A stretch of 64,000 nt of DNA from Octopus sinensis. Lineage: Eukaryota. The notes beneath the pieces were generated by a model that saw only the letters and a list, made by a program, of their open reading frames with translations, did not search any database and had not been told where the DNA came from. Below are positions 5,906 through 53,409 of this stretch, one piece after another; positions within the stretch are counted from its first letter, which is position 1, and each line of letters begins with the position of its first letter. A program made the translations under genes and the position numbers. The stretch covers positions 19,914,464-19,978,463 of the forward strand of contig NC_043011.1 in assembly GCF_006345805.1 (NCBI RefSeq), read 5' to 3'.

Positions 5906-6002
<97 letters not shown>

Positions 6003-15283: not shown

Positions 15284-15914
15284 ATAAAGATAATAAAACC
15301 ATGAATATATGATCAAAACTGCGTCCCACTTATCGGTTATTCTTATACTTGACTTTTAGCAACATATTTTATATAATGCAAGCTCCATATCATAAACTTT
15401 ATAACATTTATGATAATTTATGTTAATTCTTAATACAAATTCACCTCTTTGGCATAGTATACATAATTAATTATCAATATCTAATCTATTTTGCAGTAAC
15501 GGCAATAGACCAGAACGTCAGGCTTCGATCGTCATGAATAAATCTGAACCCAAAAATGTGATTTAAGAAAACAATCTTTCCATGCATGCAGTTGTATCTA
15601 CTTACATTTATTACAACTTTGAAAGTGTTGACTATGTCTCTCGGCTTTTAATGTGATTTTGCATCGATTTGGTAATCTACGGTTCATATATTAGTCATCA
15701 GTAATATTTATTCTCGAAGAAAATATACCTGACATGTTACGAATTCTGGTGAGGTAAATGGAGCATTTATAAGAATCGTTATTCCTAAAATGAACTGAAA
15801 CAAATTGTCTGGATTCTATTGAAAACTCGCTAAAGATAAAATACTTTGCGAAAACTTACTCCCTCAACGAGATTGAACCACTTATCAAATACTAATATAA
15901 TACATTCAATTTAT

Positions 15915-16142
15915 AGGCGGCGAGTTAGTAGAAACGTTAGCGCGCCGGGCGAAATGCTTAGCGGTATTTCGTCTGTCCTTACATTCTGAGTTCAAATTCC
16001 ACCGAGGTCGACTTTGCCTTTCATCCTTTCGGGGTCGAAAAATAAAGTACCAGTTTCGCACTGGGGTCAATGTAATCCACTTAATCCCTTTGTCTGTCCT
16101 TGTTTGTCCCTTCTATGTTTAGCCCCTTGTGGGCAGTAAAGA
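15915..16142 (+). mobile_element. tRNA-derived SINE, family B, full length with 21-bp TSD
   Basis: GGCGGCGAGTTAGTAGAAACGTTAGC...GAGTTCAAATTCC...GAGGTCGACTTTGCCTTTCATCCTTTCGGGGTCG. Perfect TSD AATATAATACATTCAATTTAT at 15894-15914 and 16143-16163. Confidence 0.92.
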
Positions 16143-17001
16143 AATATAATACATTCAATTTATCAGTACATTCATAGAGATTTATTCACGAAAATATTAA
16201 TGACACATTGATACTATAAAACAGATATTATGAAGATATTCAGGGGTAACATTTCTGTACACGCTTTATTCAATAGTTTTATCTATCCGTTCACGAGGCC
16301 AGTTTGGTTTGAAATTTTAAACTATAGAGAGGAATCTTTTGTTTTATCCGTATCTGAGTGTACAATATGACATATAAGCAACGATTATTCCTCATTATAA
16401 GTTTATTAGTAATACATTATTTACTAATTCAAATTCTACTTACTAATTCAAACGGAAAACTATTAATGAAATGCTTTGCAGTATATATTTTCAGTACCTT
16501 ACATCCTGCCGATGCCAGTTTTGTTTTTTATAAGCATATTGGAGTGATAATGTTAGAATAAAATAACAGAAAAATATTTGAAGTTGATTAAAAGTTCATA
16601 TAATGTATTATAGATGTGAATGGAATAAGAATACATTTAACGCTTATTTACAAGGAAGTTAAAAGGAAATGATGAAGTTAATGAAATAGTTATACCCCTT
16701 ACATAGCAGCTATGATATCACAAGCTTTGGTGTGATAACTGTTACGGGTATAGTGTATAGAAAAGAATATTTTTTGACATACAAACATGTATATAAATAG
16801 GATATTTATATAAAAAAAGGGGTTTTCCGATGGCCGGATAACTGAAGAGATGGTGGCGTGGATTTCCACCTCGGCATCGGAAACTCGGAGTTTTATCTTG
16901 ACTACCAAATACTTGTCACATATTACTTTTACAGATAAATTCCTCCATTTACATAATATTGAGGTCTCTTTCTTTCTTTTGTTATCTTACCGTTTTTATC
17001 A

Positions 17002-20544: not shown

Positions 20545-21274
20545 ATTACATAATATATATACAGTGAAATAATCATATATATTTTCTGACATGACAATAT
20601 TCTAGATTATATTTGCAGTAAAAATGTCAGTATCCCAAGGCATTTACATTTATATGCCATGAATGTGTATAAGTGCAATGACGAGATTGTTTTCAGAATA
20701 AATTCTACAATCGGTTAAAAGGTGGCATCAAGTATTAGTGGATATATAAAATTCCTGAAGGTTATAATTAGCGTTCACAACTTCAAATGACATGGAAATA
20801 TGATGCGAAGATTTCGGACTTAAATCATATTTCAAACTTTCATATGGTATTGAGGCAAAAACTTTATAATTATATTTTCATTTTCAAGTAAATGTCTATG
20901 AAATAGAATTCAAATAACGAAAAATTAATTTGCTAAAATAAATAATGTTATGTATATATTTTAACTTCTCTAAAATATACGACATATATTTCTCGATTTG
21001 TATATAACAATTTCTTTTTAATGTGTAGAGAGATGTTTCTGTGTTGCTTAGTTTCAGGTCAGTCGTCAGTCATACGTATCGGGGCCGGTGTATGAACAAG
21101 CACGCTTTGCGGCTTCATTTATCTAAAAAAAAAAGTAGCCTATGTAGAACTGCACCATTCGATGTAGTGTTCCTTAGTAAATCGGTAATGTGTACATTTG
21201 ATTGTCTGTTCTCACATGGCTTAATATCGTAGAGGTTTTACATTGATGATTCAAACACACACACACACACACAC

Positions 21275-21330
<56 letters not shown>

Positions 21331-21668
21331 TCTTATATATTGTATGTGCAACTCGATGTGCGATTGCTAAACAATATCTTCCCTCCTTGAATTCCACCAG
21401 TGTGTTGTTGCAATAGTTGAAACAAAGAATTAAATGTGATTCACTCACCTCCGTTATTTGCTTCTTACTTTATATTCTACGACTGAAATAATCTTCCGGA
21501 TTTTGTATTAAACACGTACAAAATAGTATTGTCTCTCAATCGAAATATCGACATATATATATATTATGTTTGGCAGTACGGGCGGGAGTAAGAAGAGAAC
21601 AGCCGGACCCTCTTCATTTACCACACACACACATATATATATATATATGTCTGTGTGTCTGTGTGCGT

Positions 21669-21762
21669 TTACCGTCTCATGGCATCAGTTCCTCCTGGCC
21701 AAAGACCCATTCACTTTGGCGAGTGGGAAAAAACACCTCCTATAGGAGTTAATATCACACAC

Positions 21763-21851
<89 letters not shown>

Positions 21852-21978
21852 TGTGTGTGTGTGTGTGTGTGTGTTGTGTGCATGTGTGTTATTAACTCCT
21901 GGTAGGAGGTGTTTTTTTCCCCACTCGCCAAAATGAATGGGTCTTTGGCCAGGAGGAACTGATGCCATGAGACGGTAA
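21669..21978. repeat. ~310-bp hairpin: ~90-bp unique arms around (AC)n(AT)n(GT)n
   Basis: TTACCGTCTCATGGCATCAGTTCCTCCTGGCCAAAGACCCATTCA... at 21669 is the reverse complement of 21880-21978. Confidence 0.92.
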
Positions 21979-23495
21979 GCAATGTTCATCAGGTACCGTT
22001 CACTCTGACCCATTGGTGGTTCACTTTCTCCAGTTGGTGGTTCACCAGAGGTGGTAAAATCACTGCTCTTCACCTCTTCCTCGCCTGCAGCTTTACTCTT
22101 CTATCTTGCTTCAAACCCAACAAGAGGATTTTTTCAGCTGCCTCTCCCATCCTGCGCTCAGCCACCCTTTGCCCCTTTCCTCTCATTCCAATGGCAGGAA
22201 GTATCATCCATGCCGACTGAACAGGGAACCCCAAACAACCAGCCTCGACTGGGAAAAGTCATATCTCCTTGCAATCCTGCACACGTCTTTCCAGAATGGA
22301 CAGTTGAGATTGAACGTATTTCCTGGAATTTCAGCTCTACAGACATTTGGGTTGATATCAAGGGCTTGATTTCTGAGGTTATCATGGTGGGTCTCCCTCA
22401 AAAATACTTTTACTTCTTCTCTAGAGCAGGTCAATTTCCTTGATTTGGTCTTCCTCAACATTTTTAGAGTGAACCTAAAAGGGTGCTTGACAAATTGCAC
22501 CCGCGTGGTTTACCTTACTTTCCTCCCATTCCGAGTACAGTCTGCCCATCTAAGCCTTTTTTATTTGTCAAGTCACTGATGCCTTCCCTTTCGTCAGCAG
22601 AAGCCCTTTTTATATTGCATATTGACAGGCTTGATTTCTCCCATCCGATGGTGCATCTCCTTTTCTCTTATGCTGTGTACCTTTTTGATTGTTGTATTAA
22701 GCGGTCTGTCCGCAGTTCTGAAGCAAGCTTTTGCCAAACTGAATGCGATAGTCATAAAATCATTCACTTTCTGTTCAGTTGTTCCTGTTAGCATGCAATC
22801 AAATATTATATCGAAGTCTTGGTCCAGTTGTTGCCATTCTTTTGTGTCATTTATCTTGGTCCATTTGATTCTAACTTCAGCTGGGTGGGATTGGCCCTCT
22901 GTGGTAGTATTGGGTGAGTTGCTCTTCCTGACGCCTTGAGGTGACACAGGTGCTGGGAGACTTCCTGTCCTCTGAGGATGTTTCTTCCTTGGACTTCTCC
23001 TGTTCCACGCCAGGTGTTAACAATGTCCGCTGCATCTGTAGCTCTTCTTCTTTTCCACAGCGGACGTGGTTCAGTGAATCTTGAGCCTTTTCACATTCTT
23101 GCCTTGCACATCTTTTATCAGTGACAATTCACTTCCAATACCACCCAAACTAATAATATCTCAACAGGTGCTACCACTGAACATTGCGGCTGTGTCTCTT
23201 CTTTTCCACTGTCACATTTGGCTCGGTGTATCTTTTTCATTTTTCCAGGTCTTTTCACATAGACATTCCTTTTCGAATATCTCTCAAATTAAGAATGGTT
23301 GGGGCAGCTTCTGTGTCCGTAAATCATTCATGGTTGTTAGAGATGGGTCCATCCTGCTGAGTCTTTTATTCTTTCCCCTCGTCTCGTGGGACTCTGGTGT
23401 GCCGCTTGCTCTTAATTCCTATAGCCCAATTGGTTCCCTTTCGCATATATATAACTGGTCTACAAGGATTTTGGCGTTTAGGAAATAGACATCAT
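21885..23495 (-). pseudogene. decayed HERO-like (R2-superfamily) non-LTR retrotransposon, N-terminal part
   Basis: In order: GKNVKRLKIH (zinc-finger remnant), RIKWTKINDTKEWQQLDQDFDIIF...GTTEQKV, FVKHPFRFTLKML...LTCSREEVKVFLRETHHD. This matches the HERO ORF layout as I recall it. Stops, frameshifts and a large internal deletion. Confidence 0.75.
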
Positions 23496-23619
23496 TCCTA
23501 TACAAATTCGGTCTCCTGAATCCAAATATAACCTCTTTGACGTACCGGGTCTAGTTGTTAAGTTATTGAACATCCCTGTAGTCACTATGTATGTGTGTAC
23601 GTCCAATGCGCGCTGTTAC

Positions 23620-24125
23620 CCTATTCTAATTCATTGATTATATGACCGACGTCAGGTAATGTTTTGAAAATACACCCACATAGATTGCACATCAGATTTG
23701 GACCAAGAGCTGCAGTTAAATTCTGATATTTGTGGATCTTCAAATGCCTTTTGAGGCCTCCATTAGAATTGCAGACCTTCTGGCATATATTGCATTGAAC
23801 GATTTGAGCCCAGCAAAAAAGGGTATAGTCTGTCACAAACTGTACAATCAAAATGGTCATTGTGATTTACGTCCTCGATCGTAACATTCTTCTTTAACTC
23901 TCTCATGAGTCTTGCATGCGTTATTCTTCAAATCCTTTCCCTCCACTCCACACTTTTGTTTGCCGTCCATCTCGATCCGAACAAGGGTTTTTATGTCCTC
24001 TGAATCCATTCCAAGTGACTTCATGATAGTCCTAATGCCGTCCTTAAACTTTTTTTTTACGTTTATACCGATAGCGTTTCTCTTCTGCAAGCTCACCTTA
24101 AAACAGCTTTAAATGATTATCGAAA
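23620..24125 (-). pseudogene. RTE-clade LINE ORF2 3' end with C2H2 zinc fingers
   Basis: LF*GELAEEKRYRYKRKKKFKDGIRTIMKSLGMD, DRDGRQTKVWSGGKGFEE, then CTVCDR (degenerate), CNICQKVCNSNGGLKRHLKIH and CNLCGCIFKTL. Confidence 0.8.
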
Positions 24126-24129
24126 TATA

Positions 24130-24585
24130 TGCTTGGTGAGGAGGGTGTTTATTGGACACCCTGCGGAATGAAAAACAAAACCCGTCAAAGGGCAGAGGAA
24201 CTCTTGAGAGTCAACGGCCATCCAATATATGTCTTAAGGCTGTATTATGCGCGGGGACATAGAAATAATCGGACCGAATACCCGATCGCGCGGTTAAACC
24301 ATTGGGAGTGAAGGACTCCTAACCTTTGTTAGGGCATCCTTCTAGGAGAAGTTAACTCAGGTAACTGGGATAACTCCCACATAAAACCTGCGGCTCAGTG
24401 GTTACCGATGATGTTGACCTGTTCTTCTTTTCGGATTATGGCTGCTGTTGCTTAGTGAGTGGGATTGACTCAGTGCACCGGCTTTCCTCACTTTAAAAAA
24501 ATCTTCTTGCACAGGCATTGCACGATAACAACATTGATTAAGCTTCGTGCAATGGCCATACTCGATAACGAGGGGGCAGCCATTA
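24130..24585. mobile_element. unassigned GC-richer repeat, possibly RTE 5'UTR pieces in opposite orientations
   Basis: GC-rich relative to flanks, several hairpins, adjacent to the RTE fragment. The assignment is inference only. Confidence 0.3.
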
Positions 24586-25789
24586 TGTATGTATGTACGT
24601 ATGTATGTACATAGGTACATATATATTCACCCACAAATATTGGTGCATGTGCACGTATGATTTTGCTTTGTGAGATTACATATGTGTTCATTTGTGTTTC
24701 AATTCACGGGTTATCGCCTGGAGATCACAGACAGTTTGACTATTTCATATGTCAATTAATTCCTGACTTTTAAATAAGTTTTCAGTATTTGAATTCTCAC
24801 TAATAGACATTCACTTCAGAATGAAAATGATATTATAAAGTTTATGCTTCAATACCAAATGAAAATTTGAAATACGAATTAAGTTTGAAATGTCGTCATA
24901 TTTGTATATGCCATTTAAACTTGTGAACACTAATTGTAACCTTTAGGAATTTTATACATCCACCAATAATTGCTGCCGCTCCTTTAAATTATTATCGAAA
25001 ACATTTAATAATTACTGGCAGTAATTGCTGAATAAGTAGTTCTGTTTCATTAGGTAAGTGATAAATTAAGTTAGTTACAAATTATATGCTGGATAGTTAA
25101 TCAATGATGATCGTTATAAACAATTAAATCATTTCAGACACTTATGAAAAATAATTGGTAATTTCTGTCGTCAATAAAAACTGTGATTTTGTGCTGCTTT
25201 CCATCATATTTATTCTATCATCGGCAGCTTATATTTCCCATTTGCACCTTTAATGTCAATGCGATGACGTATATCAAACTTTTCGCCTTAACACTTCGTT
25301 TTACGAATTCATTTAACGAGTTATTAGCCATTTTATCTTACTATTATCAATATTATTTATGTCATCAACGGAACGCACATCATTATTCATCCTGCAAACG
25401 CTTTCCGACATGCATAAAATAACAAATTTTATGTATAAACAGATTAAGCTTTGTGTATTCATATGAATTTTCTGTTGCCCGTTCATTCTTCCCCCCTCCT
25501 CCGGAATATGCTTTCTATGTCAAGTACACGCGTACGAAACGAACTAATTCTCTATATATTTGGTACTCAACGTGCAGAAACTTACAACTTCGTATTTCTT
25601 ACTATTTATATGTTGATGTTTTATTGGCTATAAGCAAAATGCACGTAACGATTGTGATTTTTTAGAATCTAGTCTCTTCGGTCATAGAATCAATGAAGGT
25701 TTCCGCAATACGTAGGTGACCTACAAATATTAAGTGTACAATATCTGAACAGAACTGCTAATTATCTCAACATTTTTCATGTTAATTAT

Positions 25790-27249
25790 CTCAACATAGG
25801 ATCATGTTCAAGGTGGCTTCGTCATTCATTCGTGCCATCCTTGCTACATTTACCCATCTTTTTTTGAAATAATCGCTAGACAAAACTTCCCTCTCTACTC
25901 TCACCTTCCTTTTCAAGTGATACTTGAAAAAGTTGATGAGAGATTGACCAAAGAGGAAAGTGTTTGTCTCTAATCTTTTCAGACGCGTCCACCAGATACA
26001 TTCTTTCGCCATAGCTACAAGTATTATGAAAATAGCTCTTCCTTCCCGTTTGAAGGAAGGAGGCGTAACGATATTGACGATAGACTCGGCTGATAAACCG
26101 ACTCGTCCCACACGTGACAGCAGTCGTTCGACATAAGCCCACAGGTCAGAAATGGTTGGACACTGCGCGAGAGCGTGCAGAACGGTTTCGTCGCTCTGAC
26201 CGAATCTCAGGCAGGTCGGCCCCGTGTTTCTCGAACCATGTCTATAGAGCTTATCCCGAACGTGTAGCGCTTCTCGATAGCACTGCCAGACTAGGGATCT
26301 CTGGAAATTGTCCATTGGTCCCGGCCCGAAAGTTGTCTTGAACAGGTGGGTCAGGTATTCCTCGTCGACGCCCCGAGATCGTCGTCGTACCTCCCCTCTA
26401 CTAATCCCCTACAAAATGCTTTCTTAGTGATGCAATGGCTCAAGTTCGACCCAGGAAGGTAAAGATGCTGGAGACAACAACGCGACACTCGCGGTGCCAT
26501 TCGCCCTTCCTCGGCCTCTTTTTGATCCTCGATTGCAGTTCGGTCATGGACAAGAGTTGCGGGAAAGCGCGCCGCACAAACGGCGACCACACATGCTCAC
26601 CGTCGTCTACATAGAGCCGACGATTTCGCAGTCTCAGCGCGTGTCTGCGCATCATCAAGCACGGCATGCCCAGCCCTCCTTTCAGCGGGTGTCGACAGCA
26701 AACGGATCGCCTGACCTTCGGAACGTTTCCTTTCCACAAGAAGTGGAAGAAGATGCGTTCCAGGTTGGTGACGGTGGGTCGGGACAAGGCACGACGGTCA
26801 GGCGGTAGTTGATGACGGACGCGATGTACGTGTTCGCCACCTCCGCCTGAACTTTTAGGCAGCCCTACACGTTATGCCGTCCCAGTTCTTCTCCGTTTCC
26901 AGGTCTGGACCGAACCAGACTCCGAGCAATTTGACCGGCCCACCCGTCCAGCGTCCCACTACTGAGGCGCTAGAGGACGGCATGGGCTTGCTTCTCCAGG
27001 TGCAGAGCCGCAAGCCCACCGACTTTTCTCGGTTGATTTTTGCTCCCGTCACCGCTTCGTAGTCTTGCAGTGTCTCACCGACTTTGGGTGGTCGTGTCGG
27101 TACCTGTCAGACAGTTGAAAGCGTCTGAGCAGGTCTCTGAGGCATTTACATCCCCGTCTATTTTTGCCTCTCCCCACGTAGTCTAGATGCGTGTCCAAGG
27201 TAGCATTCCAATACCCCACTAAAAGTAAAGTTCCCAGGAATACTTCTAG
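25790..27249 (-). pseudogene. internally deleted Tx1/L1-like LINE ORF2
   Basis: EN C-terminus (LLLVGYWNATLDTHLD...LSDRYRHDHP) is joined near 27083 to the RT end (DYEAVTGAKINREKS, VKLLGVWFG, FLWKG...KGGLGMP) and zf-RVT (CLRFGQSDETVLHALAQC). A 15-bp direct repeat TAATTATCTCAACAT lies at 25759 and 25783. Confidence 0.88.
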
Positions 27250-28220
27250 ACTAATTCATTCGGATGTACAAATTGTTTGCACGGGTAACCTGCCCTGTGT
27301 GGCGGTTTTCCCGTTTTTGTGTTTCTGTTTTCGGCTTTTTTAGCCATTTTATTTTCACGATGGTGACTTCAAGCCAGGAAGTCGTTGTTGAAAAGAACGC
27401 TGGTCTCCTTGACAATGTTTACGAAGTTGATTCACTTACACTGCCTTCACCACAGCTTCATGAAGGGGGGAAGAAGGGAGGAGCAAGACAGGTGCAGGTG
27501 TGAGCATGAACGCCAACACCGCCAGCGACACATGAAAAATTGGAAGCACCCAGACGACAGCTTCACAGTCAACTACTGAATCGGACAACTCTGCCATAAA
27601 CATCACCACCACCACCAACAACAACAACTACAACGATATCGTCGATTTGCTATCTACCATAACTTCCAACAACAACACCACTACTACAACCTCAACTACT
27701 ACAAATGACACCTCTGCCCCCAACACTACCACCAAAAACAAATCCAAATTTGTAGTAGTTGAGGTTGTAGTAGTGGTGTTGCTGTTGACAGTTATGGTAG
27801 ACGGCAAAACGACGATATCGTTGTTGTTGTTGGTGGAGGTGGGGGTGGTGGTGGTGGTGGTGGTGATGTTTGTGGCAGAGTTGTCAGATTCAATAGTTGA
27901 CTGTGAAGCTGTCGTCTGGGTGCTTCCAATTTTTTGTGTGTCGGTGGCGATGTCAGTTTTCATGCCCACACTTGCACCTGTGTTGCTCCTCCCCTTCTTC
28001 CCTCCTTCATGAAGCTGTGGTGAAGGCAGTGTAGGGAAATCAACGTCGTAAGCGTTGTCAAGGAGACCAGCGTTCTTTTCAACAACGACTTCATGGCTTG
28101 AAGTCGTAATCGTCAAAATAAAATGGCTAAAAAAGCCGAAAACAGATACACAAAAACGGGAAAACCGCCACACAGGGCAGGTTTCCCGTGCAAACAATTT
28201 GTACAACCGAATGAATTAGT
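27250..28220. repeat. 971-bp inverted repeat (arms 27250-27706 and 27748-28220, 41-bp spacer)
   Basis: The arms are reverse complements, about 90% identical by manual count. The ORF track shows the same peptide on both strands (27264+ and 28206-). Confidence 0.95.
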
Positions 28221-28780: not shown

Positions 28781-29123
28781 ATATATGGGTACAGGACATC
28801 AAAAAATCGTTGAACACAATTAGAAACGAAAACATAAATACAAAAACATAGAAACGAATTTTTTTTTCGAAGAATGAACGAAACAGAGAAACCAGACACA
28901 AAACAAGGTCTATTTTAAGGAAGTCGCGTCTTGTCCTTGCCGTCCTAACGTGGAGTGAATGAAACAGGGACAACTAAAGAAGGAGAATATTCTTTATGTT
29001 GTATGTCTCATTTCTCTGTTTGTTTTTTCGTTGTTCGAAAAACGTTTGTTTCTATGTTTTTGTTTTTATGTTTTCGTTTCTCATTGTGTTCAACGTTTTT
29101 TTTTATGTCCTGTACCCATATAT
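28781..29123. mobile_element. hairpin MITE-like element, ~125-bp arms
   Basis: ATATATGGGTACAGGACATCAAAAAATCGTTGAACACAAT... pairs with ...ATTGTGTTCAACGTTTTTTTTATGTCCTGTACCCATATAT; spacer about 100 bp. Confidence 0.8.
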
Positions 29124-29517
29124 GCATGTATATATATATGTAAATGTAGGTATGTACATATATGTATGTATATATGCATATATTTCTATATCATTTATTA
29201 TATATAATATATATATATTATATATATATATATATAATTTCAACAATTGAGGGCAAAATTAATTAATTATTAATCAATTTCACCAAGTGTTCAGTATGCA
29301 AAGGGACCATTCAAGGCGAATTCAAATTATTACATTATATAAAAGGGCTTAGTAAAATAAATTACTTTGCCGCATACTGAACTCATTAGAAATAGCAGCT
29401 AAAAAACTTTTTTAAAGCTATTTCTAATACTTAAAGAAAATCTCTCTCATATATAGTGTTTGCTTAATTCAACTCACAAAAGTTTGGGGGTAAGGACATC
29501 GAAAAATCAAATGCTAA

Positions 29518-29583
29518 GGTTTTTGAGAACGTACGTTTCAAGATTAGTCAAAACAACACTTCTATCATCAGCTCAGAAATTCC
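29518..29583 (-). ncRNA. type I hammerhead ribozyme, copy 1
   Basis: Minus strand reads UGAG CUGAUGA (29571-29565) ... GAAAC GUAC GUU CUCA. Predicted cleavage between 29528 and 29527. Confidence 0.75.
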
Positions 29584-30057
29584 TTGGTTCGGATTTGGAA
29601 ACACTGAAAATAAGAACATACCCTTTCGAAGATCTGCTCGTAACTAACAGTGCCAACAAATTCAAATAAGCAAGCGAAGAATCTCTGTTCTCCCCTTTCC
29701 ACCAGCGTGGGTTAAAATCATCAAACACTATGCTTATTTCGGTAAAATCCGAAGCATTAATCAGAGGGAGATTAATTATAATTTCAACAATTGAGGGCAA
29801 AATTAATTATTAATCAATTTCACCAAGTGTTCAGTATGCAAAGGGACCATTCCAGGCGAATTCAAATTATTACATTATATAAAAGGGCTTAGTAAAATAA
29901 ATTACTTTGCCGCATACTGAACTCATTAGAAATAGCAGCTAAAAAACTTTTTTAAAGCTATTTCTAATACTTAAAGAAAATCTCTCTCATATATAGTGTT
30001 TGCTTAATTCAACTCACAAAAGTTTGGGGGTAAGGACATCGAAAAATCAAATGCTAA

Positions 30058-30124
30058 GGTTATTTGAGAACGTACGTTTCAAGATTAGTCAAAACAACAC
30101 TTCTATCATCAGCTCAGAAATTCC
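30058..30124 (-). ncRNA. type I hammerhead ribozyme, copy 2
   Basis: Same core (CUGAUGA at 30112-30106). Predicted cleavage at 30069/30068. Confidence 0.75.
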
Positions 30125-30600
30125 TTGGTTCGGATTTGGAAACACTGAAAATAAGAACATACCTTTCGAAGATCTGCTCGTAACTAACAGTGCCAACAAA
30201 TTCAAATAAGCAAGCGAAGAATCTCTGTTCTCCCCTTCCACCAGCGTGGGTTAAAATCATCAAACACTATGCTTATTTCGGTAAAATCCGAAGCATTAAT
30301 CAGAGGGAGATTAATTATAATTTCAACAATTGAGGGCAAAATTAATTAATTATTAATCAATTTCACCAAGTGTTCAGTATGCAAAGGGACCATTCAAGGC
30401 GAATTCAAATTATTACATTATATAAAAGGGCTTAGTAAAATAAATTACTTTGCCGCATACTGAACTCATTAGAAATAGCAGCTAAAAAACTTTTTTAAAG
30501 CTATTTCTAATACTTAAAGAAAATCTCTCTCATATATAGTGTTTGCTTAATTCAACTCACAAAAGTTTGGGGGTAAGGACATCGAAAAATCAAATGCTAA

Positions 30601-30667
30601 GGTTATTTGAGAACGTACGTTTCAAGATTAGTCAAAACAACACTTCTATCATCAGCTCAGAAATTCC
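30601..30667 (-). ncRNA. type I hammerhead ribozyme, copy 3
   Basis: Same core (CUGAUGA at 30655-30649). Predicted cleavage at 30612/30611. Confidence 0.75.
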
Positions 30668-31145
30668 TTGGTTCGGATTTGGAAACACTGAAAATAAGAA
30701 CATACCCTTTCGAAGATCTGCTCGTAACTAACAGTGCCAACAAATTCAAATAAGCAAGCGAAGAATCTCTGTTCTCCCCTTTCCACCAGCGTGGGTTAAA
30801 ATCATCAAACACTATGCTTATTTCGGTAAAATCCGAAGCATTAATCAGAGGGAGATTAATTATAATTTCAACAATTGAGGGCAAAATTAATTAATTATTA
30901 ATCAATTTCACCAAGTGTTCAGTATGCAAAGGGACCATTCAAGGCGAATTCAAATTATTACATTATATAAAAGGGCTTAGTAAAATAAATTACTTTGCCG
31001 CATACTGAACTCATTAGAAATAGCAGCTAAAAAACTTTTTTAAAGCTATTTCTAATACTTAAAGAAAATCTCTCTCATATATAGTGTTTGCTTAATTCAA
31101 CTCACAAAAGTTTGGGGGTAAGGACATCGAAAAATCAAATGCTAA

Positions 31146-31212
31146 GGTTATTTGAGAACGTACGTTTCAAGATTAGTCAAAACAACACTTCTATCATCAG
31201 CTCAGAAATTCC
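31146..31212 (-). ncRNA. type I hammerhead ribozyme, copy 4
   Basis: Same core (CUGAUGA at 31200-31194). Predicted cleavage at 31157/31156. Confidence 0.75.
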
Positions 31213-31609
31213 TTGGTTCGGATTTGGAAACACTGAAAATAAGAACATACCCTTTCGAAGATCTGCTCGTAACTAACAGTGCCAACAAATTCAAATAAGC
31301 AAGCGAAGAATCTCTGTTCTCCCCTTTCCACCAGCGTGGGTTAAAATCATCAAACACTATGCTTATTTCGGTAAAATCCGAAGCATTAATCAGAGGGAGA
31401 TTAATTATAATTTCAACAATTGAGGGCAAAATTAATTAATTATTAATCAATTTCACAAGTGTTCAGTATGCAAAGGGACCATTCAAGGCGAATTCAAATT
31501 ATTACATTATATAAAAGGGCTTAGTAAAATAAATTACTTTGCCGCATACTGAACTCATTAGAAATAGCAGCTAAAAAACTTTTTTAAAGCTATTTAAAGC
31601 TATTAAAGC

Positions 31610-31695
<86 letters not shown>

Positions 31696-31698
<3 letters not shown>

Positions 31699-31886
31699 GA
31701 AAGTTTACGAAAAAAACAAAAGACGAAGACAGGTGGTGTACAAAACAAACAGATGTATTAGTATAACGCTCAGGAATAGATAATGTCTTTTTACGTTTCG
31801 AGCCAACGCTCTTCTACAGAAAGGTACACAGAAAAAACAAGGAGAGAAACAAGGAGAGGAAAAAAAGGAGAGAAAAAATGTGTGTA
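31696..31886 (-). mobile_element. short PLE pLTR-like element with variant minimal hammerhead (31787-31824)
   Basis: Reverse complement of 58689-58853. Motif TTT CTGTAGA A GAGC GTTG GCTC GAAAC GTA AAA. The 3' end is in (TA)n. Confidence 0.7.
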
Positions 31887-33229: not shown

Positions 33230-33396
33230 ATTCGGTTACATGGACCTCAATACGAAACTGGTGCTTATTTTATCGACTCCGAAAGGATGAAATGCAAACT
33301 CGAGCTCGGCGAAAATTGAACTCAGAACGTATTGACGGACGACAGACGGTGAGCATTTGGCCAGGCATGCTAATGATGCTGCCAACCCGTCTCCTT
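33230..33396 (-). mobile_element. SINE family B, diverged
   Basis: Reverse complement matches the family B head and central block. Confidence 0.75.
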
Positions 33397-33688
33397 ATAT
33401 TAGACAATAATATTAGTAAAGCTAACATCCATTGTTGTTTATTTGCTACCACACACACGCTCAATCGTGGTTAGATCAATTTACTTTTCTTAAGCTGCAA
33501 AAGCCGTTCCAACCATACCTGCACAGAACACAACTACATTTACCCCATTAGCAATCTAAAACATTTCACCGTTATTTTTAAGTAATTTCATATTTATATA
33601 CATACGAATAAACTTGATATATATGTATATACACACCCACACACATATGCCACATATATATGTACGTTTGTATTTATGCATCTGTATT

Positions 33689-35754: not shown

Positions 35755-35961
35755 AAATTTTGGCACAAGGCCAGCAATTTCAGGGGGAGGGATAAATCCG
35801 TTATATCGATCCAAGTGCCCAACTGATGCGTATTTTATCGACCTCGAAGGGGATGAAAGGCAAAGTCAATCTCGTCAGAATTTGAACTCAGAACTTAAAG
35901 GCGGACGAAATACCGCTAAGAATTTTGAACTGAGTGGTAACTATTCTGCCAGCTCGCCTCT
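35755..35961 (-). mobile_element. SINE family B (tail variant B2)
   Basis: Reverse complement of GAGGCGAGCTGGCAGAATAG...CTTTGCCTTTCATCCCCTTCGAGGTCG...GGCCTTGTGCCAAAATTT. Confidence 0.8.
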
Positions 35962-36139
35962 TTATCCTATTTAACCGTTTTAATACTTGTAGCAATATCG
36001 CCATCATGCATACGGTCTGGTACCTGTTTATACCGACTATAATCCAAATTGAAGAAAAAGGAATTAGATGTAGCTGCCGCCTTGACTGTTTTGCTGAATA
36101 TACTCGGATTTGGCAAAGTTTGAACAAGCAGTAATGTAG

Positions 36140-43410: not shown

Positions 43411-43439
43411 ATCATTGTTATTATGCGGTATTTCGTCTG

Positions 43440-44265
43440 TCTTCAAGTTTTGAGTTCAAATTCCTCCAACGTCGACTTTGCCGTTTATCCTTTCGGGGTC
43501 GATAAAATAAATACCAGTTGAACACTAGTGTTGAAGTAATCGACTCATTCCCTCCCCCAGAATCGTTAGCATACTGGACTAAATGCTTATCAGTTTTTCG
43601 CCTGTCACTACCTTCTGAGTTTAAATTCCGCCGGGGTCGACTTTGCCTTTTATCTTTTCATGGTCGACAAATTTAGTACCAATGAAATACTGGGGTGGTA
43701 TTCGAATTATCCCATCCCCAAAATGGCTGCCCTTGTTGCAAACTTTGAACCATTATTATAATTAAGGCGGTCAGCTGGCAGGATCGTTAGCACACCGGAC
43801 GAAATGCTTGACAGTATTTCGTTTGGATCTACGTCCTGAGTTCAAATTCCGCCGAGGTCATCTACGCCTTTCATCTTTTCGTGGTCAGTAATTTAAGTGG
43901 GATTGATGCAATCCACTCGCCCCGCCCCCCAACAAAAAAATTCAGGCCTTGCGCCTTTAGTAGAAAACTTTATTATTATTAATAAGGCAATGAGCTGGCA
44001 GAATTGCTAGCAGCTGGGCGTAATGATTAGCAGTATTTCATGCATCTTTGCATTCTGAGTTCAAACTCCGCGGCGGTTGTCTTTGGCTTTCATCCTTTCG
44101 AAGTCGATAAATTCAGTACCAGTAAAACATTGATGTCTATGTAATCGATTAGGAGGTAAATCGATTCCCACTGACCCCAGTACGTAATTTATCGACCCCG
44201 AGAGAATTTGAACTCAGAACGTAACGGCAGACGAAATACCCTAAGCATTTCGCTCGGTGTGTTAA
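43440..44265. mobile_element. cluster of about five SINE B/B2 copies and fragments (four +, one -)
   Basis: Repeated GAGTTCAAATTCC...GTCGACTTTGCC...TCGATAAA blocks, some separated by short ATT runs. Confidence 0.8.
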
Positions 44266-46441
44266 CGATTTTTCCAGCTCGACGAATTCCGAATAATCGT
44301 ATTAATAAAGACTATTTGTTAGGTTATTATTATATTTTATTTATTATTTATTTATTTATTGCGATATTTATCCAATTTACATTTTTATAGAATATACTAT
44401 GAATGTAGAAACAATAATGACAATATTATATTGATAAAGGAAAAACAAACTCCAATAGGTTGTGATATAATATAGGGATGCAGTAAAAATACCCTGTAGT
44501 CTACCTTTTTTTTATTAGATATGACTGTATGAACCATCTTTAATACCTGTTTCAAATAGGAAGCCCACGTGACGATAAACATAGAGAAACCGTGTTCGAT
44601 ATGATTTGTTTTTTTTTTCAGGAGTACAATTGAAGATTACTTACGTTGCTTTCAATGCAGGTTTGCACATAGTGAAAATACTATTTCTTTGATGCTGAAA
44701 TCAGAAAAATATGACCTTAATCAATACTTATTTTTATTCATATCGATTCGGCAAAATTTCAAACCATAGACGCAAACTTTGAATGGACCCCAGTATCTTT
44801 AAGTTATTCGACAACAATATCATTTTTGATTATGAAAACAGTTGTAGCAACAAATGCAAATTTTGAAATCAGAGAGAAGAAAGACTAGACTAAATGTTGA
44901 AAAGAATTTAATCCGCTTCTTTAGCTTCAGTTGTTTACATAAATCATTGTTATGTTCTTTTGAGAAGTGGTAGGATTCCCGCAGCAATACCGCAATAATT
45001 TATACGTAGTTTTTAAGCCCAGCAGAATTCACAATCGCACACAATGCCTATTTAACTATCATACTCCTGCTTCTATTTTATTTATCTTTATTTTTGTTTT
45101 CAGCAGCAGTATTTGTTGATTGGCCTATAAATATTCTCTATCTTTTCCAAGAAAAAGAAAAATTACTTCAGCAGACATATCATTTCCCATGTGTTATTTC
45201 CTAAATGTAGTTTTAGAATTGAAAATAAGAAAAGGAAAAAGGCTTGATTTGTTTGCAGCAAATAGCAAGAAATTATAGAAAAGAAAATCATTCTTATTTA
45301 TTTTCAAAATATTATTTTCATCAATCATGTTTTATATTCTTCAAAAGTCAGAATTTTCTAAAATAAAAACAAATTGAGGTAAACATTGAAGATATCCAAG
45401 AAACTTTTCGTATGAGTGAAATAAAAGTTTACAACATTATGACAACGTAACATGAAAAATAAAATTAGCATGGGATTATATATTAAATGTTTCTAACTTT
45501 GGAAACATCCTATAATTTCAGCGATGTACGTAGTCAATCGAATGGACGCCACTACTAGGATGGTGGGTATAATTTTTATCGATTCAGCGAGTGTGAAAGG
45601 CAAATTGGATAACATGCTATATACTTTATCATTGGTTCTATCGTTCTAGGTCCAACGTATTTTTGCGAAATGCTGTAGCCGAGTGTGTAGGATGTATGTA
45701 CACATCTTATGATCATGGGTTCGATTTGCAGATCGGACGAAACATAGTTATGTTCAATACCTTACCTCATTTCATATATTTTTATCCTGTCAACAAATTA
45801 AAGCTAACACTGGCTATGAGGATTAACTTTGCGATATACTAGTGACCACTTAGGGAAAATTTTCGAAGATACCAACCGCCTCGTATTCTATTTCTTCTAA
45901 AGGAAGGCTATCACAACAGCACGATTTGCCCCACTGGCAAGCCTTTCAACCGCAGAATATCTGGGGTTTGAACACATGAGGGATTGTTTGATAATATCTA
46001 TAAGCTTAGTTAGTCGCGGTTACTTTAGTGAAGATGATGCCGAGGACCCTCTAAGAATAGTGGGTGAGGAAAATTGATTGGATTGATGATCTGAGCAAAT
46101 AAAATATATTTATATTTGTTAACACCCCTTTGAAAGACTTGAAAGTCAGAATGAATTATTCCTGTTCTAAAGTATTCCACTACTTATTCCTTTAAACAGA
46201 TTAATCAGAACATGTCCAAATTATTTAGTATAAATCACAGATACAGTCTAGATCTGCTGTTTACAATAATGTACACGTTTGTGATATTTAAAGAACCATA
46301 CAGTAACATTTACTGGGGATTATACCGTGTGAATTTAACTGGTTTCGGCCTACGATACGTAAATATTCAATCAACAGAGATGTAAAGTGAATGTGACGGT
46401 GTGTCATGAATGAAACTAAACATCATATAATATATTTGTTT

Positions 46442-46620
46442 CAAATTTTGACACAAGTCCAGCAATTTGGGGGGAGAGGCTAAGTCGATTACATCGATCC
46501 CAATGCTCAACTGGTACTTAATTTATTGACCTCGAAAGAGTGAAGGTCAAAGTCGACCACGGCGGAATTTGAACTAAAAGCATGAAGACGGACGAAATGC
46601 CGATAAGCATTTTTCCTGGG
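46442..46620 (-). mobile_element. SINE family B2, 5'-damaged
   Basis: Reverse complement of the family B central block and B2 tail. Confidence 0.75.
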
Positions 46621-49147: not shown

Positions 49148-49750
49148 GAAAATTATCTAATTTTGATAATAGTTATACCAGAAGGCTTTTGTAGCATATC
49201 ATACGAGAAGTACATGATTAAATATAACGTTTAAATTCCTAAGTTTCCGAATTTTTTAAAGGGTGCTCACTACTTTAAACCCAAACACTTAGTCCATTGA
49301 AATATGATGAGATTAACTTATAGGAAGAAGAATTGATTTATTATTTAGTGTGGTGTCTCGATTTTGACAGATAGGTAGTGATAGCAGAATATATAATAAC
49401 TATTGTAGTTTAATATATTAGTCAACTGAAAACAAACAATATAACAGTTCTTATAAAGTATAAACTATCAGGTTATAAATATAGACACAACTGTATACTT
49501 ATATTCTCATGCAATGTCAAGAGAAAAGGTCATACAATCGCTGTGTGAAAGAGTTCAGGCTCGTTATTAAATTATTGAGAACATCTATTTTGTAACGATT
49601 AATGAGATGGCATGAAGATTCGAAATCACCACACATAAAGTTGGAATTGTTATATAGCATTTAGAGACATGTTTGAATTTCTTTCCCTTTCTTAATCGTT
49701 CTATAGGTTTTAAAAACAAAAAATTTGCTAGCCTATATTTGCTTGTTTTA

Positions 49751-49983
49751 AGGCGGCGGGCTGGCAGAAACGTTAGCGTGCCGGGCGAAATACTTAGCGA
49801 CATTTCGTCTGTCGTTACGTTCTGAGTTCAAATTCCGCCGAGGTCGACTTTGCGTTTCATCCTCTCGGGGTCGATAAATCAAGTACCAGTTACGCACTAG
49901 GGTCGATGTAATCGACTTAATCCGTTTTGTCTGTCCTTGTTTGTCCCCTCTGTGTTTAGCCCCTTGTGGGTAATAAAGAAACA
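49751..49983 (+). mobile_element. SINE family B, full length with 16-bp TSD
   Basis: TATATTTGCTTGTTTT at 49734-49749 and 49984-49999. Confidence 0.92.
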
Positions 49984-51009
49984 TATATTTGCTTGTTTTT
50001 TCTTTTTTTAGATTTTTCTTTTTTTTCGTTTATCTACCCAAAAACGTAAAGTTACAGTCACTGCTCACCCTGAATAAAATACATATAAAATCGAAGCAAT
50101 TCTAATCTCCATTCTATCTTTTCATTCAGATTTTATGTATATCTACGACTACTCTATGCAATGTGTACTGACATTTTAAACTAGTAATGTATAATTTTGA
50201 GTAGATTGCCCAGTACTTTTGGCTGCCTAAATGAGATAATGGATGGAATTGCATGTGTTGTGTTGCGACGGAACTGTATATGTTGCAATGCAATAAAAAT
50301 TATCATATTGTTATGCAGTAAACTTCATGCGTTATGACTGAATAAAACTTTCTACGTTATGCGGCATTTCTCATAATATCAGAATTCATGTAATAAAAAT
50401 ATGAGTCATTAATATATTGCAGTTAATAATTTGTTAGAAACAATTATACTGTGATTAAAAATTATCGCATTAATTAATTGCAACACTATTTCTTCGAATC
50501 TATTTAACTAAACGTACAAAATCGTTAAGCGTACACTTTTGAAACAAGGTCTAAATTAAGGTAATAATTATTTACTTCTATAAGTTACATAGTTACTTCG
50601 AGAAGATGTGAAAACATTGTTGACGAATTCGGTAACAGTGAATTAATGGTAATTATATTACCAAATAAACAGAAGCAGTTTAAGCGTCAGACAAAATGCC
50701 TGGGGTATTCAGTTACAGCACTTAAACATCTGCGCTCGCATCGTGCCAAGGTCAATTTGGCTTTCGTCCTTCCGGCAGTAAACGACAAAAATCTGACAAT
50801 CAAATATTGAGGGATAATTAGATAACTTTATGTTAATGTATCGTATGATGGTGTAGTAGAAACCGAAAATTGTGATTTAAGCAATAAACAAATAATTCCT
50901 GCAAGACATTTTACACGGATGCACCACCGTTTTTGCTGAACTGAATTCCGATAAACCTTTTTCAATAATCTGCTAGATGTAATCATCAACGTTCCGTTTT
51001 CGGATTATA

Positions 51010-51487
51010 GGCGGCCAGCTGGCAGAAAAGTTAGCGCGCCGGGTGAAATGCTTAGCGGTATTTCGTCTGTCGAAAGGGCGGCGAACTGGCACAATCGTTA
51101 GCAGGCCGGGCGAACTGCCTAGCGGCATTTCGTCTGCCGTTACGTTGTGAGTTCAAATTCCGCCGAGGTCGACTTTGCCTTTCATCCTTTCGGGGTCGAT
51201 AAATTAAGTACCAGTTACGCACTGGGGTCGATGCAATCGACTTAATACCTATGTCTGTCCTTGTTTGTCCCCTCTGCTTAGCCCCTTGTGGGTAATAAAA
51301 AATAGGTATTTCGTCTGTAGTTACGTTCTGAGTTCAAATTCCACCGAGGTCGACTTTGCTTTTCCTCCTCTCGGGGTCGATAAATCCAGTACCAGTTTCG
51401 CACTGGGTCGATGTAATCGACTTAATCCCTTTGTCTGTCCTTGTTTGTCCCCACTATGTTTAGCCCCTTGTGGGAAGTAAAGAAATA
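51010..51487 (+). mobile_element. SINE B nested inside another SINE B
   Basis: Outer copy 51010-51072 plus 51305-51487; inner copy about 51076-51304. TSD GGTATTTCGTCTGT(C/A)G at 51057-51072 and 51305-51320. Confidence 0.9.
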
Positions 51488-52455
51488 TATATATCTTGCT
51501 TACAAAGCTTCCTCTTCATGGTGGCAATTGCATGTAGGACACAGTACTACCGTAACCCGGTAATCAATTCTGCTTATCGACAATTGGCGAATTTTGAATA
51601 TAGTTCACAAAGAACCGAAAGTGTCATTTCAAGATATCAAGCGCGCTCGCAAAATGTTTCCAGTCGTCAGCCGTAGACCTTTAATATTTCTATCGACTCT
51701 AAAACGATGTACAAGGAATTTGCCGAATTGAATCTAAACCAAAAATCTATGATTCAACTATAAGAAGCCCGTGGTTTGTGCGAGACGTAGAAATTGTATT
51801 AAATTATTGGTATTTCTTTACTTGGCAGTTTTACTTTCATTGTTTTCTTTTACAGTAGATTTTACTTCTTACGTTCTAAGTTCAACTGAAACGTTGGTGA
51901 ACTTTCTCTTTTGTCATTCAGGTTGGTAACATACAATTACCAGTCATGTACTAGTAGCTGATTCCTTCCCTCAGAATTAACGGTGTCATATCTCAATCAA
52001 AACCCAAATTTATTTTATTTGGCGTGGTGAACGTGAAAGAAATAGTAGAGCAGCGGAAATGGTCTTTATGATATTTCTCCCCAAATCTTACGTTCTGAAT
52101 TCAAATCCCACCGAGATGAATTTCAAATTGTATCAATCGAGGGTCGATAAAATTATATACTAACCAAGTACTGGATTTGGTGGTAGAGAGCATACATATT
52201 TCTCTAAAACTGTTGGCCTCATACCGACGTCAAAATAATTTATATTTTCATTGCTGAAGAGCATATTAAGCAGGGGTAGGCATAGCTGTGTGATCAAAAC
52301 ATTCCTTTAAATTCTTCGTTTTTTTTAATTTGATCCTACTAGTAAAAGACATTCTCGGTGCGTTCTGCGGGAGCTTCAGTTTTGCCAATATATTATGATT
52401 GTATTTTGGTAGACCCAAATTTTGTTGTCTATCAAATCGTAAATTAGCGATTCTG

Positions 52456-53280: not shown

Positions 53281-53409
53281 TATGGATTATTCTATTACGA
53301 CTTCATTGCTTTCAGGCTTAGCTTAAGGTATTTTCGCGACCGACATCACAAAATGCGCCTGATTAAACATTGCCGGACAGCAAATAGGGACTCACACATT
53401 GCTTAGAAA

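What the first reader, a model, noticed from the sequence alone, without database searches (positions are those of the whole stretch)
29233..31595. Tandem ~545-nt units, each with a hammerhead ribozyme: candidate retrozyme / circular-RNA element
Seen in sequence: each of the four full units reads on the minus strand GGAAUUUC-UGAG CUGAUGA UAGAAGUGUUGUUUUGACUAAUCUU GAAAC GUAC GUU/ CUCA-AAU-AACC (copy 1 has AAAAACC). All invariant core nucleotides are present (CUGAUGA, GAAA, NUH) and stem I closes (UGAG/CUCA). Stem II is AGA/UCU plus a weak distal helix, and stem III is the palindrome ACGUACGU. Predicted cleavage points are 541, 543 and 545 nt apart. Established: tandem repeats with one type I hammerhead per unit occur as newt satellite 2, Schistosoma SM-alpha, cricket pDo500 and metazoan non-LTR retrozymes. 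Their multimeric transcripts self-cleave to monomers that can circularise, and PLEs carry similar motifs in their pLTRs. Inference: this is a non-coding, non-autonomous ribozyme retroelement making ~545-nt monomers or circles, probably mobilised by a PLE. That is long for this class as far as I recall. I cannot tell whether this family has been described. Caveats: the U10.1-U11.1 pair and the GUU triplet are suboptimal, so activity is not guaranteed.
Basis: partly seen in the sequence, partly recalled or inferred. Interest (0 to 1): 0.93.

Follow-up and report, generated by a model that had tools for sequence, protein, structure and literature searches.

The report
Hammerhead-ribozyme tandem repeat (retrozyme) in cephalopod
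A short array of about 545-bp non-coding repeats, each carrying a self-cleaving "hammerhead" RNA motif, sits inside a TA microsatellite. It looks like a new, somewhat unorthodox member of the known animal "retrozyme" class of small circular-RNA mobile elements, not a new kind of element.

Summary
Window 29233-31595 holds 4.35 head-to-tail copies of a 541-545-bp, 33% GC, non-coding unit. Each copy carries the described type I hammerhead motif on the minus strand. The motif is not chance: a descriptor just loose enough to admit it hits only these four sites. In 6397 shuffled windows it gave 64 hits, none with the palindromic helix III seen here. No Rfam hammerhead model detects it, even at E<=10 on 121 nt. 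Three features are non-canonical: a U.U then A-U base of helix II instead of G10.1-C11.1, a GUU cleavage site, and a thermodynamically disfavoured active fold. All three are in line with published dimer-acting metazoan and Penelope-type hammerheads. The monomer RNA is unusually structured (z -6.5 on the ribozyme strand). The array lies in the (TA)n tail of a short repeat whose paralogue elsewhere in the window lacks it. TA microsatellites are a reported target of Penelope-like elements. No homologous copy could be retrieved, so core conservation, transcription, cleavage, circularisation and mobilisation remain inferred. Verdict: a probable non-LTR retrozyme, a new member of a known kind, of modest interest. 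The 545-nt unit is not unusually long, since published families span 51-972 bp.

The parts
29233..31595 (-). Head-to-tail array of 4.35 copies of a 541-545-bp non-coding unit. On the minus strand it reads 5'-[unit positions ~107-545][545][543][541][1-296]-3'.
31144..31214 (-). Hammerhead motif 1. Parts: distal helix I AAGG/CCUU; internal loop AAUUUC/AAUAA; helix I UGAG/CUCA; core CUGAUGA (31200-31194); helix II of 25 nt (U.U, then AGA/UCU, AA bulge, AGU/ACU, 9-nt loop); GAAA; helix III AC/GU with a GUAC loop. Predicted cleavage after U31157.
30599..30669 (-). Hammerhead motif 2, identical to motif 1. Predicted cleavage after U30612.
30056..30126 (-). Hammerhead motif 3, identical to motif 1. 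Predicted cleavage after U30069.
29516..29585 (-). Hammerhead motif 4. Its only difference lies in the internal loop of helix I (CUCAAAAACC). Predicted cleavage after U29528.
31583..31612 (-). 5' junction of the array on the minus strand. It holds three short partial duplications, AGCTTTAAT / AGCTTTAAAT / AGCTTTAAAAAAG, abutting (TA)n.
31610..31695 (.). (TA)43 microsatellite bordering the array. It is the tail of the adjacent short repeat.
29118..29236 (.). Imperfect TA/TG microsatellite bordering the other end of the array. The array ends inside the unit's own ATTATA, a microhomology with (TA)n.
31696..31852 (-). Short dispersed repeat whose TA tail received the array. Its paralogue at 58695-58875 (90.8% identity) ends in (TA)10(TG)24 and has no hammerhead unit, so it serves as a paralogous empty site.

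Best explanation
This is a non-autonomous, non-coding retroelement of the metazoan non-LTR retrozyme type. The proposed mechanism has five steps. (1) The array is transcribed on the minus strand as a multimer. (2) Each unit carries a type I hammerhead whose helix III is only A-U and C-G closed by GUAC. Because AACGUACGUU is a perfect palindrome, two motifs in one multimeric transcript, or in two transcripts, can pair into a double hammerhead with an 8-bp helix III. They would then cleave after GUU, releasing 541-545-nt monomers with 5'-OH and 2',3'-cyclic-phosphate ends. (3) A host RtcB-type tRNA ligase circularises the strongly self-paired monomer. (4) The circle serves as a rolling-circle template for a reverse transcriptase supplied in trans, most likely from a Penelope-like element, giving more-than-unit cDNA. 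(5) That cDNA is inserted at a TA microsatellite. What is shown here: the array, the complete catalytic core and three helices, the non-randomness of the motif, the palindromic helix III, the stabilisation by dimerisation, the strand-biased RNA structure, the lack of coding capacity, and the location inside a (TA)n tail with a paralogous empty site. What is inferred: transcription, cleavage, ligation, reverse transcription and the identity of the mobilising enzyme.
For: The core and helices were read directly from sequence and recovered by two independent descriptors, only at the four array copies. In shuffles, 64 relaxed hits arose in 6397 windows and none had a palindromic helix III. A single hammerhead fold scores +0.6 kcal/mol, whereas the double hammerhead scores -13.4 kcal/mol for two 67-nt domains. 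The monomer RNA has an MFE of -142.7 kcal/mol (z -6.5) on the minus strand against -118.5 (z -4.0) on the plus strand. As a circle the values are -138.0 (z -5.7, 24 G.U pairs, 64% paired) against -111.5 (z -4.3, 10 G.U pairs). The unit is 33% GC with ORFs <=75 aa that have no relatives. The literature gives matching precedents. Metazoan type I hammerheads have a helix III of 1-2 bp capped by a small palindromic loop and act as dimers, and PLE variants have a 4-5-bp helix I, a long helix II and an unpaired nucleotide at its 5' base (PMC4209133). Axolotl HHR_Amex2 has a 2-bp helix III with a tetraloop and a U.U mismatch at the base of helix II, yet self-cleaves 22% in 1 h and better as a dimer; RtcB circularises these RNAs (PMC7229834). 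Retrozyme units of 51-972 bp, mostly <=7 repeats per array, are related to PLE pLTRs. PLE clades prefer (TA)n targets (PMC8557442). The array lies between TA microsatellites, and the paralogue of the flanking repeat has the microsatellite tail without the array.
Against: No Rfam hammerhead model matches at gathering score or at E<=10. The G10.1-C11.1 pair, highly conserved even in PLE mini-hammerheads, is replaced by U.U followed by A-U. U17 is a poor and rare cleavage-site nucleotide (my own knowledge of minimal-hammerhead kinetics). The active fold is predicted to be unfavourable. A local alternative hairpin that sequesters GAAAC-GUACGUU scores -6.6 kcal/mol, and enforcing the hammerhead in a dimeric full-length transcript costs about 11.6 kcal/mol. 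Even the dimer MFE of -23.6 kcal/mol is not the double hammerhead. No second genomic copy, no homologue from any collection and no PLE gene were found. Core conservation, covariation and mobility are therefore untested. A z-score of about -6 to -7 is not unique in this window, which is rich in foldback repeats: one of 24 random segments gave -7.5.
Confidence: 0.68

Rival explanations
1. Decayed retrozyme relic. The unit descends from a hammerhead retrozyme or a PLE pLTR, but the ribozyme is now catalytically dead or nearly so, with the G10.1-C11.1 pair lost and a GUU site. On this reading the 4.35-copy array grew or was homogenised by DNA-level processes such as unequal exchange or replication slippage between TA tracts, not by circular-RNA retrotransposition.
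For: The motif has a non-canonical helix II base and U17 and finds no Rfam match. The active fold is unfavourable. There is only one locus in the window. The copies are 98.7-100% identical, and their differences are mostly homopolymer indels, compatible with recent DNA-level duplication.
Against: All 11 invariant core nucleotides are intact in every copy, together with the palindromic helix III that a functional dimer needs. HHR_Amex2, which has the same U.U feature, is active. Near-identity of the copies means there has been no time for decay since the array formed.
Confidence: 0.17
2. Ordinary local tandem duplication, such as a minisatellite or young satellite, that carries a hammerhead-like string by chance.
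For: Rfam is negative. No homologues were found. The window is full of microsatellites and foldbacks that promote duplication.
Against: The chance expectation is about 1-2e-4 per unit for the relaxed motif. It is at least 64-fold lower once the palindromic helix III is required (0 of 64 shuffle hits). The one-motif-per-unit arrangement, the strand-biased structure and the TA-tract location all match the retrozyme class.
Confidence: 0.05
3. Part of a Penelope-like element proper: tandem pLTR remnants of a truncated or rearranged PLE, not a separate non-autonomous family.
For: PLE pLTRs carry dimer-type hammerheads. PLEs form tandem or partial-tandem insertions and target (TA)n. Retrozyme families are sister to pLTRs.
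Against: No reverse transcriptase or GIY-YIG piece lies next to the array. The nearest coding remnant, 25794-27255 on the minus strand, is a LINE with zf-RVT, separated from the array by microsatellites and a foldback. The array is >4 identical short units with nothing between them, which is the retrozyme layout and not pLTR-ORF-pLTR.
Confidence: 0.07
4. The copy number is an assembly artefact: a single unit or a dimer has been expanded, or a longer array collapsed.
For: Inter-copy differences are nearly all homopolymer or short-repeat indels, typical of long-read errors.
Against: There is one substitution (T/G at 29853) and a 4-nt indel. Distinct 5' and 3' junctions with unique flanks argue for a real multi-copy array. 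This rival affects only the copy number, not the nature of the unit.
Confidence: 0.03

Closest known systems
Metazoan non-LTR retrozymes (Cervera & de la Pena 2020, PMC7229834), especially axolotl Rtz_353 with HHR_Amex2
   Same: Both are head-to-tail repeats of a few hundred bp with one type I hammerhead per unit. Both have low GC, no LTR, PBS, PPT or ORF, and a highly self-paired monomer RNA. Both have a 2-bp helix III with a tetraloop and a U.U mismatch at the base of helix II, and both are expected to act as dimers.
   Different: The unit is 541-545 nt against the 170-400 nt described there, although it lies within the 51-972 bp range of the 2026 survey. Helix II is much longer and interrupted (25 nt). 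The cleavage triplet is GUU. No canonical loop1-loop2 contacts are recognisable. The motif is not detected by Rfam. The host is a cephalopod, and no family of this sequence has been reported.
Minimal or variant hammerheads of Penelope-like element pLTRs (Cervera & de la Pena 2014, PMC4209133; Lunse et al. 2017, from my own knowledge)
   Same: Both have a short helix I (4 bp), an enlarged helix II with an unpaired nucleotide at its 5' base, palindromic 15.2-16.2 and loop 3, and predicted dimeric action with low activity as a single motif. Both are associated with TA-microsatellite insertion sites.
   Different: Those hammerheads flank an RT/GIY-YIG ORF, and none is present here. They keep G10.1-C11.1, which is absent here. 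This motif has a real, if tiny, helix III hairpin and an extended helix I.
Newt satellite 2, Schistosoma Sm-alpha and cricket pDo500 hammerhead satellites
   Same: All are tandem genomic repeats transcribed into multimers that self-cleave at one type I hammerhead per unit. The newt motif needs the double-hammerhead conformation.
   Different: Those are high-copy satellites or SINE-like families with canonical helix II and loop-loop contacts, and Rfam RF00163 detects them. Here there is a 4.35-copy array with a non-canonical helix II.
Plant LTR retrozymes
   Same: Both are non-autonomous elements whose hammerhead-bounded RNA of about 600-1000 nt circularises. The monomer size is similar.
   Different: Plant elements use type III hammerheads inside LTRs and have a PBS, a PPT and 4-bp TSDs, and they are mobilised by Ty3/gypsy elements. 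None of these features is present here.

Membership tests
Hammerhead ribozyme, type I | Conserved catalytic core C3-U4-G5-A6-N7-G8-A9 ... G12-A13-A14 ... U16.1-H17 | tested here: met
   CUGAUGA, GAAA and GUU are present and identical in all four copies.
Hammerhead ribozyme, type I | Three helices around the core, with helix I open and helices II and III closed by loops | tested here: met
   Helix I is UGAG/CUCA plus distal AAGG/CCUU. Helix II is AGA/UCU plus AGU/ACU. Helix III is AC/GU with a GUAC loop. The helices are weak: the single-motif fold scores +0.6 kcal/mol.
Hammerhead ribozyme, type I | G10.1-C11.1 pair closing helix II | tested here: not met
   The positions are U10.1.U11.1 followed by A-U. 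Axolotl HHR_Amex2 is an active precedent with a U.U base.
Hammerhead ribozyme, type I | Match to the curated covariance models (Rfam RF00163 and the rest of the hammerhead clan) | tested here: not met
   No hammerhead family is listed at gathering score, at E<=10 on 2.8 kb or at E<=10 on 121 nt.
Hammerhead ribozyme, type I | Covariation or conservation of helices and core across homologues | not testable with these tools
   No homologous copy was retrieved. The four copies are identical in the motif.
Hammerhead ribozyme, type I | Site-specific self-cleavage giving 2',3'-cyclic phosphate and 5'-OH ends | not testable with these tools
   This needs in vitro transcription and cleavage assays.
Metazoan non-LTR retrozyme | [quoted passage not shown] | tested here: met
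   There are 4.35 units of 541-545 bp with one motif each. The size lies within the published 51-972 bp range.
Metazoan non-LTR retrozyme | Non-coding, GC <50%, and no LTR, PBS or PPT | tested here: met
   GC is 33%. ORFs are <=75 aa with no relatives. There are no terminal repeats other than the units themselves.
Metazoan non-LTR retrozyme | Monomer RNA predicted to be stable and highly self-paired | tested here: met
   The z-score is -6.5 for the linear form and -5.7 for the circle, with 64% of bases paired. Structure is stronger on the ribozyme strand.
Metazoan non-LTR retrozyme | Dispersed multi-copy family in the genome, with TSDs when discernible | not testable with these tools
   The window holds a single locus. 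A TSD cannot be discerned because the insertion lies in a TA microsatellite. No eukaryotic genome search is available.
Metazoan non-LTR retrozyme | Expression as unit-length linear and circular RNA | not testable with these tools
   No transcriptome data are accessible.
Metazoan non-LTR retrozyme | Co-occurrence with autonomous Penelope-like elements in the same genome | tested here: inconclusive
   No PLE domain was found in the window ORF pieces tested. The literature reports PLEs in octopus and squid genomes, and the taxon is inferred only from a 55% hit to Argonauta hians.
Penelope-like element pLTR hammerhead | Motif located in direct repeats flanking an RT / GIY-YIG ORF | tested here: not met
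   There is no such ORF beside the array. The neighbour is a LINE remnant with zf-RVT.
Penelope-like element pLTR hammerhead | Extra nucleotide after A9, palindromic 15.2-16.2 and loop 3, short helix I and long helix II | tested here: met
   U follows A9, AACGUACGUU is a palindrome, helix I is 4 bp and helix II spans 25 nt, as described in PMC4209133.

The most novel reading that the evidence does not exclude
The motif is a fully active, dimer-dependent hammerhead variant with a U.U/A-U helix II base and a GUU site. It would define a cephalopod retrozyme family that current covariance models cannot see and that produces abundant circular RNAs of about 545 nt in octopod tissues. That would imply that Rfam-based censuses, such as the 235 Hammerhead_1 hits in the giant squid, substantially undercount ribozyme-bearing mobile elements in molluscs.
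Probability: 0.35. Interest if true: 0.45.

Novelty: new member of a known kind. Interest (0 to 1): 0.32.

Why it matters
If confirmed, this would add cephalopods to the animals known to carry circular-RNA-forming hammerhead retrozymes. It would also add an example of a natural hammerhead that lacks the G10.1-C11.1 pair and uses a GUU site. It would show concretely that standard Rfam scans miss such elements. Finally, its position inside a TA tail, with a paralogous empty site, gives a tidy insertion-site example linking retrozymes to the TA-microsatellite targeting reported for Penelope-like elements. It does not open a new class or settle a long-standing question.

Tried and rejected
(1) Rfam was run at gathering score on the whole window and at E<=10 on 2.8 kb and on 121 nt. 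No hammerhead or other ribozyme family matched. The only listings were sub-threshold mir-297/mir-466-like hits on the TA/TG microsatellite hairpin at 29110-29184 and C/D-box or CRISPR-DR noise, all well below their gathering scores.

(2) I hunted for homologous copies through translated unit ORFs. Two word-index searches found no candidate.

(3) An exhaustive phmmer search of 1.8 billion representatives returned one hit, P0007. It proved to be one weak 31-aa match counted 19 times in a 61-nt tandem repeat of an unrelated ENA contig. That contig has no DNA similarity to the unit and no hammerhead, so I rejected the hit.

(4) An exact-pattern scan of JGI metagenome contigs for stem I, core and helix III found nothing. 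A back-translated scan also found nothing.

(5) I looked for PLE genes in the window. Pfam on 19 stop-free pieces gave only zf-RVT (LINE) and a C2H2 finger.

(6) tRNA and bacterial promoter/terminator scans of the region were uninformative.

(7) I tried an alternative register that would make the cleavage site GUUC with C17. I rejected it because helices I and III do not form.

(8) A distal helix I criterion was useless as a discriminator: 40 of 64 shuffle hits also met my loose definition.

(9) A scan for mini-hammerheads elsewhere in the window found none.
Full report
**Observation.** Searching for GAAACGTACGTT gives four sites, with predicted cleavage points 545, 543 and 541 nt apart. BLAST of one unit against the window delimits the array at 29233-31595. 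It contains three complete cleavage-to-cleavage units, a 5' partial of about 440 nt and a 3' partial of 296 nt, which makes 4.35 units and four ribozyme motifs. Identity is 98.7-100%, and the unit occurs nowhere else in the 64 kb. TRF did not list the array only because its period limit is 500. The copies differ at seven places, mostly homopolymer or short-repeat indels. Only one difference touches the motif, in the internal loop of helix I of the last copy.

**Is the motif more than chance?** I wrote a type I hammerhead descriptor just loose enough to admit the candidate: helix I >=4 bp, CUGAUGA, helix II >=3 bp with one basal mismatch allowed, GAAA, helix III >=2 bp, UH. In the real window it hits only the four array copies. 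In dinucleotide-preserving shuffles of the window it gives 0.010-0.023 hits per 64 kb on both strands, or about 1-2e-4 per 545-nt unit. Of the 64 hits in 6397 shuffles, none had a self-complementary helix III. The real motif has A-C-GUAC-G-U, which lies inside a perfect 10-nt palindrome, AACGUACGUU. A second descriptor for palindrome-type mini-hammerheads also finds only these four sites. The motif is therefore not a chance string.

**What speaks against a textbook hammerhead.** No Rfam hammerhead family is reported at gathering score on the window, at E<=10 on 2.8 kb, or at E<=10 on 121 nt centred on a motif. Helix II starts with U.U and then A-U instead of the G10.1-C11.1 pair, which is highly conserved even in PLE mini-hammerheads. 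The cleavage-site nucleotide is U17, which is permitted but poor. Thermodynamically, the single-motif hammerhead fold scores +0.6 kcal/mol, while a competing hairpin that buries GAAAC-GUACGUU scores -6.6 kcal/mol. Forcing the hammerhead at the junction of a full-length dimer costs about 11.6 kcal/mol.

**What the literature says about such features.** Cervera and de la Pena describe most metazoan type I hammerheads as having a helix III of 1-2 bp capped by a small palindromic loop, so that they work as dimers in tandem transcripts. PLE-associated variants have a 4-5-bp helix I, an enlarged helix II and an unpaired nucleotide at its 5' base (PMC4209133). The axolotl HHR_Amex2 has a 2-bp helix III with a tetraloop and a U.U mismatch at the base of helix II. 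It cleaves 22% in an hour as a monomer and much better as a dimer, and its 353-nt RNA is found as circles in vivo and is circularised by RtcB (PMC7229834). For the present motif, the double-hammerhead arrangement with an 8-bp intermolecular helix III scores -13.4 kcal/mol, against +1.2 for two separate motifs. Dimerisation is thus the plausible active form, although it is not the predicted MFE dimer (-23.6 kcal/mol).

**The unit as an RNA.** The 543-nt monomer on the ribozyme strand folds to -142.7 kcal/mol (z -6.5 against 100 shuffles), and the complementary strand to -118.5 (z -4.0). Folded as circles, the values are -138.0 (z -5.7, 64% paired, 24 G.U pairs) against -111.5 (z -4.3, 10 G.U pairs). 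This strand bias fits selection on the minus-strand RNA and matches the 'highly self-paired' retrozyme RNAs. There is a caveat: this window is rich in foldbacks, and one of 24 random 543-nt segments reached z -7.5. The unit has 33% GC, and its ORFs are at most 75 aa and have no relatives in a 5.8-billion-protein index.

**Surroundings and insertion site.** On the minus strand the array begins at unit position about 107 with three short partial duplications (AGCTTTAAT, AGCTTTAAAT, AGCTTTAAAAAAG) abutting (TA)43 at 31610-31695. It ends inside the unit's own ATTATA, abutting an imperfect TA/TG tract at 29118-29236. The (TA)43 is the tail of a short dispersed repeat at 31696-31852. A paralogue of that repeat at 58695-58875 (90.8% identity) likewise ends in (TA)10(TG)24 but carries no hammerhead unit, so it acts as a paralogous empty site. 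Arkhipova and colleagues report that PLE clades show a strong insertion bias for microsatellites, (TA)n in particular, which often hides target-site duplications (PMC8557442). This is indirect support for PLE-type mobilisation.

No PLE gene is present among the window ORF pieces tested. The nearest coding remnant, 25794-27255 on the minus strand, is a degenerate LINE with a zf-RVT domain. Octopus and squid genomes are reported to contain PLEs, and the giant squid to contain 235 Rfam Hammerhead_1 hits. I found no report of a cephalopod retrozyme family.

**Comparative evidence.** I could not obtain any. The metagenome pattern and back-translated scans were empty. The protein-index searches were also empty. 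The single phmmer hit was a spurious repeat protein from an unrelated 61-nt tandem repeat. Conservation of the core relative to its flanks, covariation, copy number in the genome, transcription, cleavage and circularisation therefore remain untested.

**Comparison and verdict.** In architecture this is a metazoan non-LTR retrozyme: one type I hammerhead per few-hundred-bp unit, AT-rich, non-coding and self-paired. Its ribozyme lies between the canonical amphibian type (Amex2-like helix III and U.U base) and the PLE variant type (short helix I, long helix II). The unit length is not exceptional, since 51-972 bp is reported. It fails two membership criteria for a canonical hammerhead, the G10.1-C11.1 pair and the Rfam model. 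I therefore file it as a probable retrozyme with a variant hammerhead whose activity is unproven.

My probabilities are about 0.68 for a functional or recently functional retrozyme, 0.17 for an inactive relic, 0.07 for a PLE pLTR remnant, 0.05 for a chance motif in an ordinary duplication, and 0.03 for an assembly artefact in the copy number. Novelty: a new member of a known kind. Interest is modest at 0.32. It would be somewhat higher if the variant proves active and widespread in cephalopods while remaining invisible to standard models.

Noticed in passing
window 31696-31852 and 58695-58875: A short dispersed repeat of about 160-190 bp has two copies at 90.8% identity in opposite orientation. 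Each ends in a TA-containing microsatellite tail, which suggests a SINE or LINE 3' end with a microsatellite tail. One copy's tail hosts the hammerhead array.
   Followed up: partly
window 27250-28220: A palindrome of about 970 bp (arms 229 nt at 93%, overall 86%) lies in a GC-rich stretch next to the LINE remnant. Both arms read the same 75-aa-plus ORF-like sequence in opposite directions. It may be an inverted 5' duplication of a retroelement.
   Followed up: partly
window 1872-2719, 21669-21978, 28781-29123, 58147-58320: Several foldback inverted repeats (74-95% identity) are present, some centred on (CA)n(TA)n(TG)n-type microsatellites. The 1872-2719 family has further copies at 60421-61055. 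Foldbacks are unusually dense in this window.
   Followed up: no
window 20715-24987: 219-bp inverted ends at 80% identity lie about 4.3 kb apart and enclose a C2H2 zinc-finger ORF piece at 23624-23866. This may be a DNA transposon with terminal inverted repeats.
   Followed up: no
window 15910-16148, 33232-33412, 35793-35964, 43425-44284, 46481-46612, 49749-49990, 51077-51495: A SINE-like family of about 130-240 bp has more than a dozen copies at 70-92% identity. They include a cluster at 43.4-44.3 kb and a 67-nt internal tandem duplication at 51010-51136.
   Followed up: no
window 25794-27255 (-) and 52835-53302: There are two degenerate copies of the 3' part of a non-LTR (LINE) retrotransposon at 81.5% identity, with a zf-RVT domain. 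The best named relative is from Argonauta hians at 55% identity, and unnamed ENA contigs reach 77%.
   Followed up: partly
window 29110-29184: Rfam gives sub-threshold 'mir-297 / mir-466 / mir-3149' hits (up to 45 bits against gathering scores of 85-100) on a TA/TG microsatellite hairpin next to the array. This is a low-complexity artefact, not a microRNA.
   Followed up: yes
L001 (ENA ERZ21930224 ctg37333l) 3001-7077: A 1358-aa 'protein' was called through a 61-nt tandem repeat that stays in frame every three units. It surfaced as a spurious phmmer hit because one weak match was counted 19 times.
   Followed up: yes
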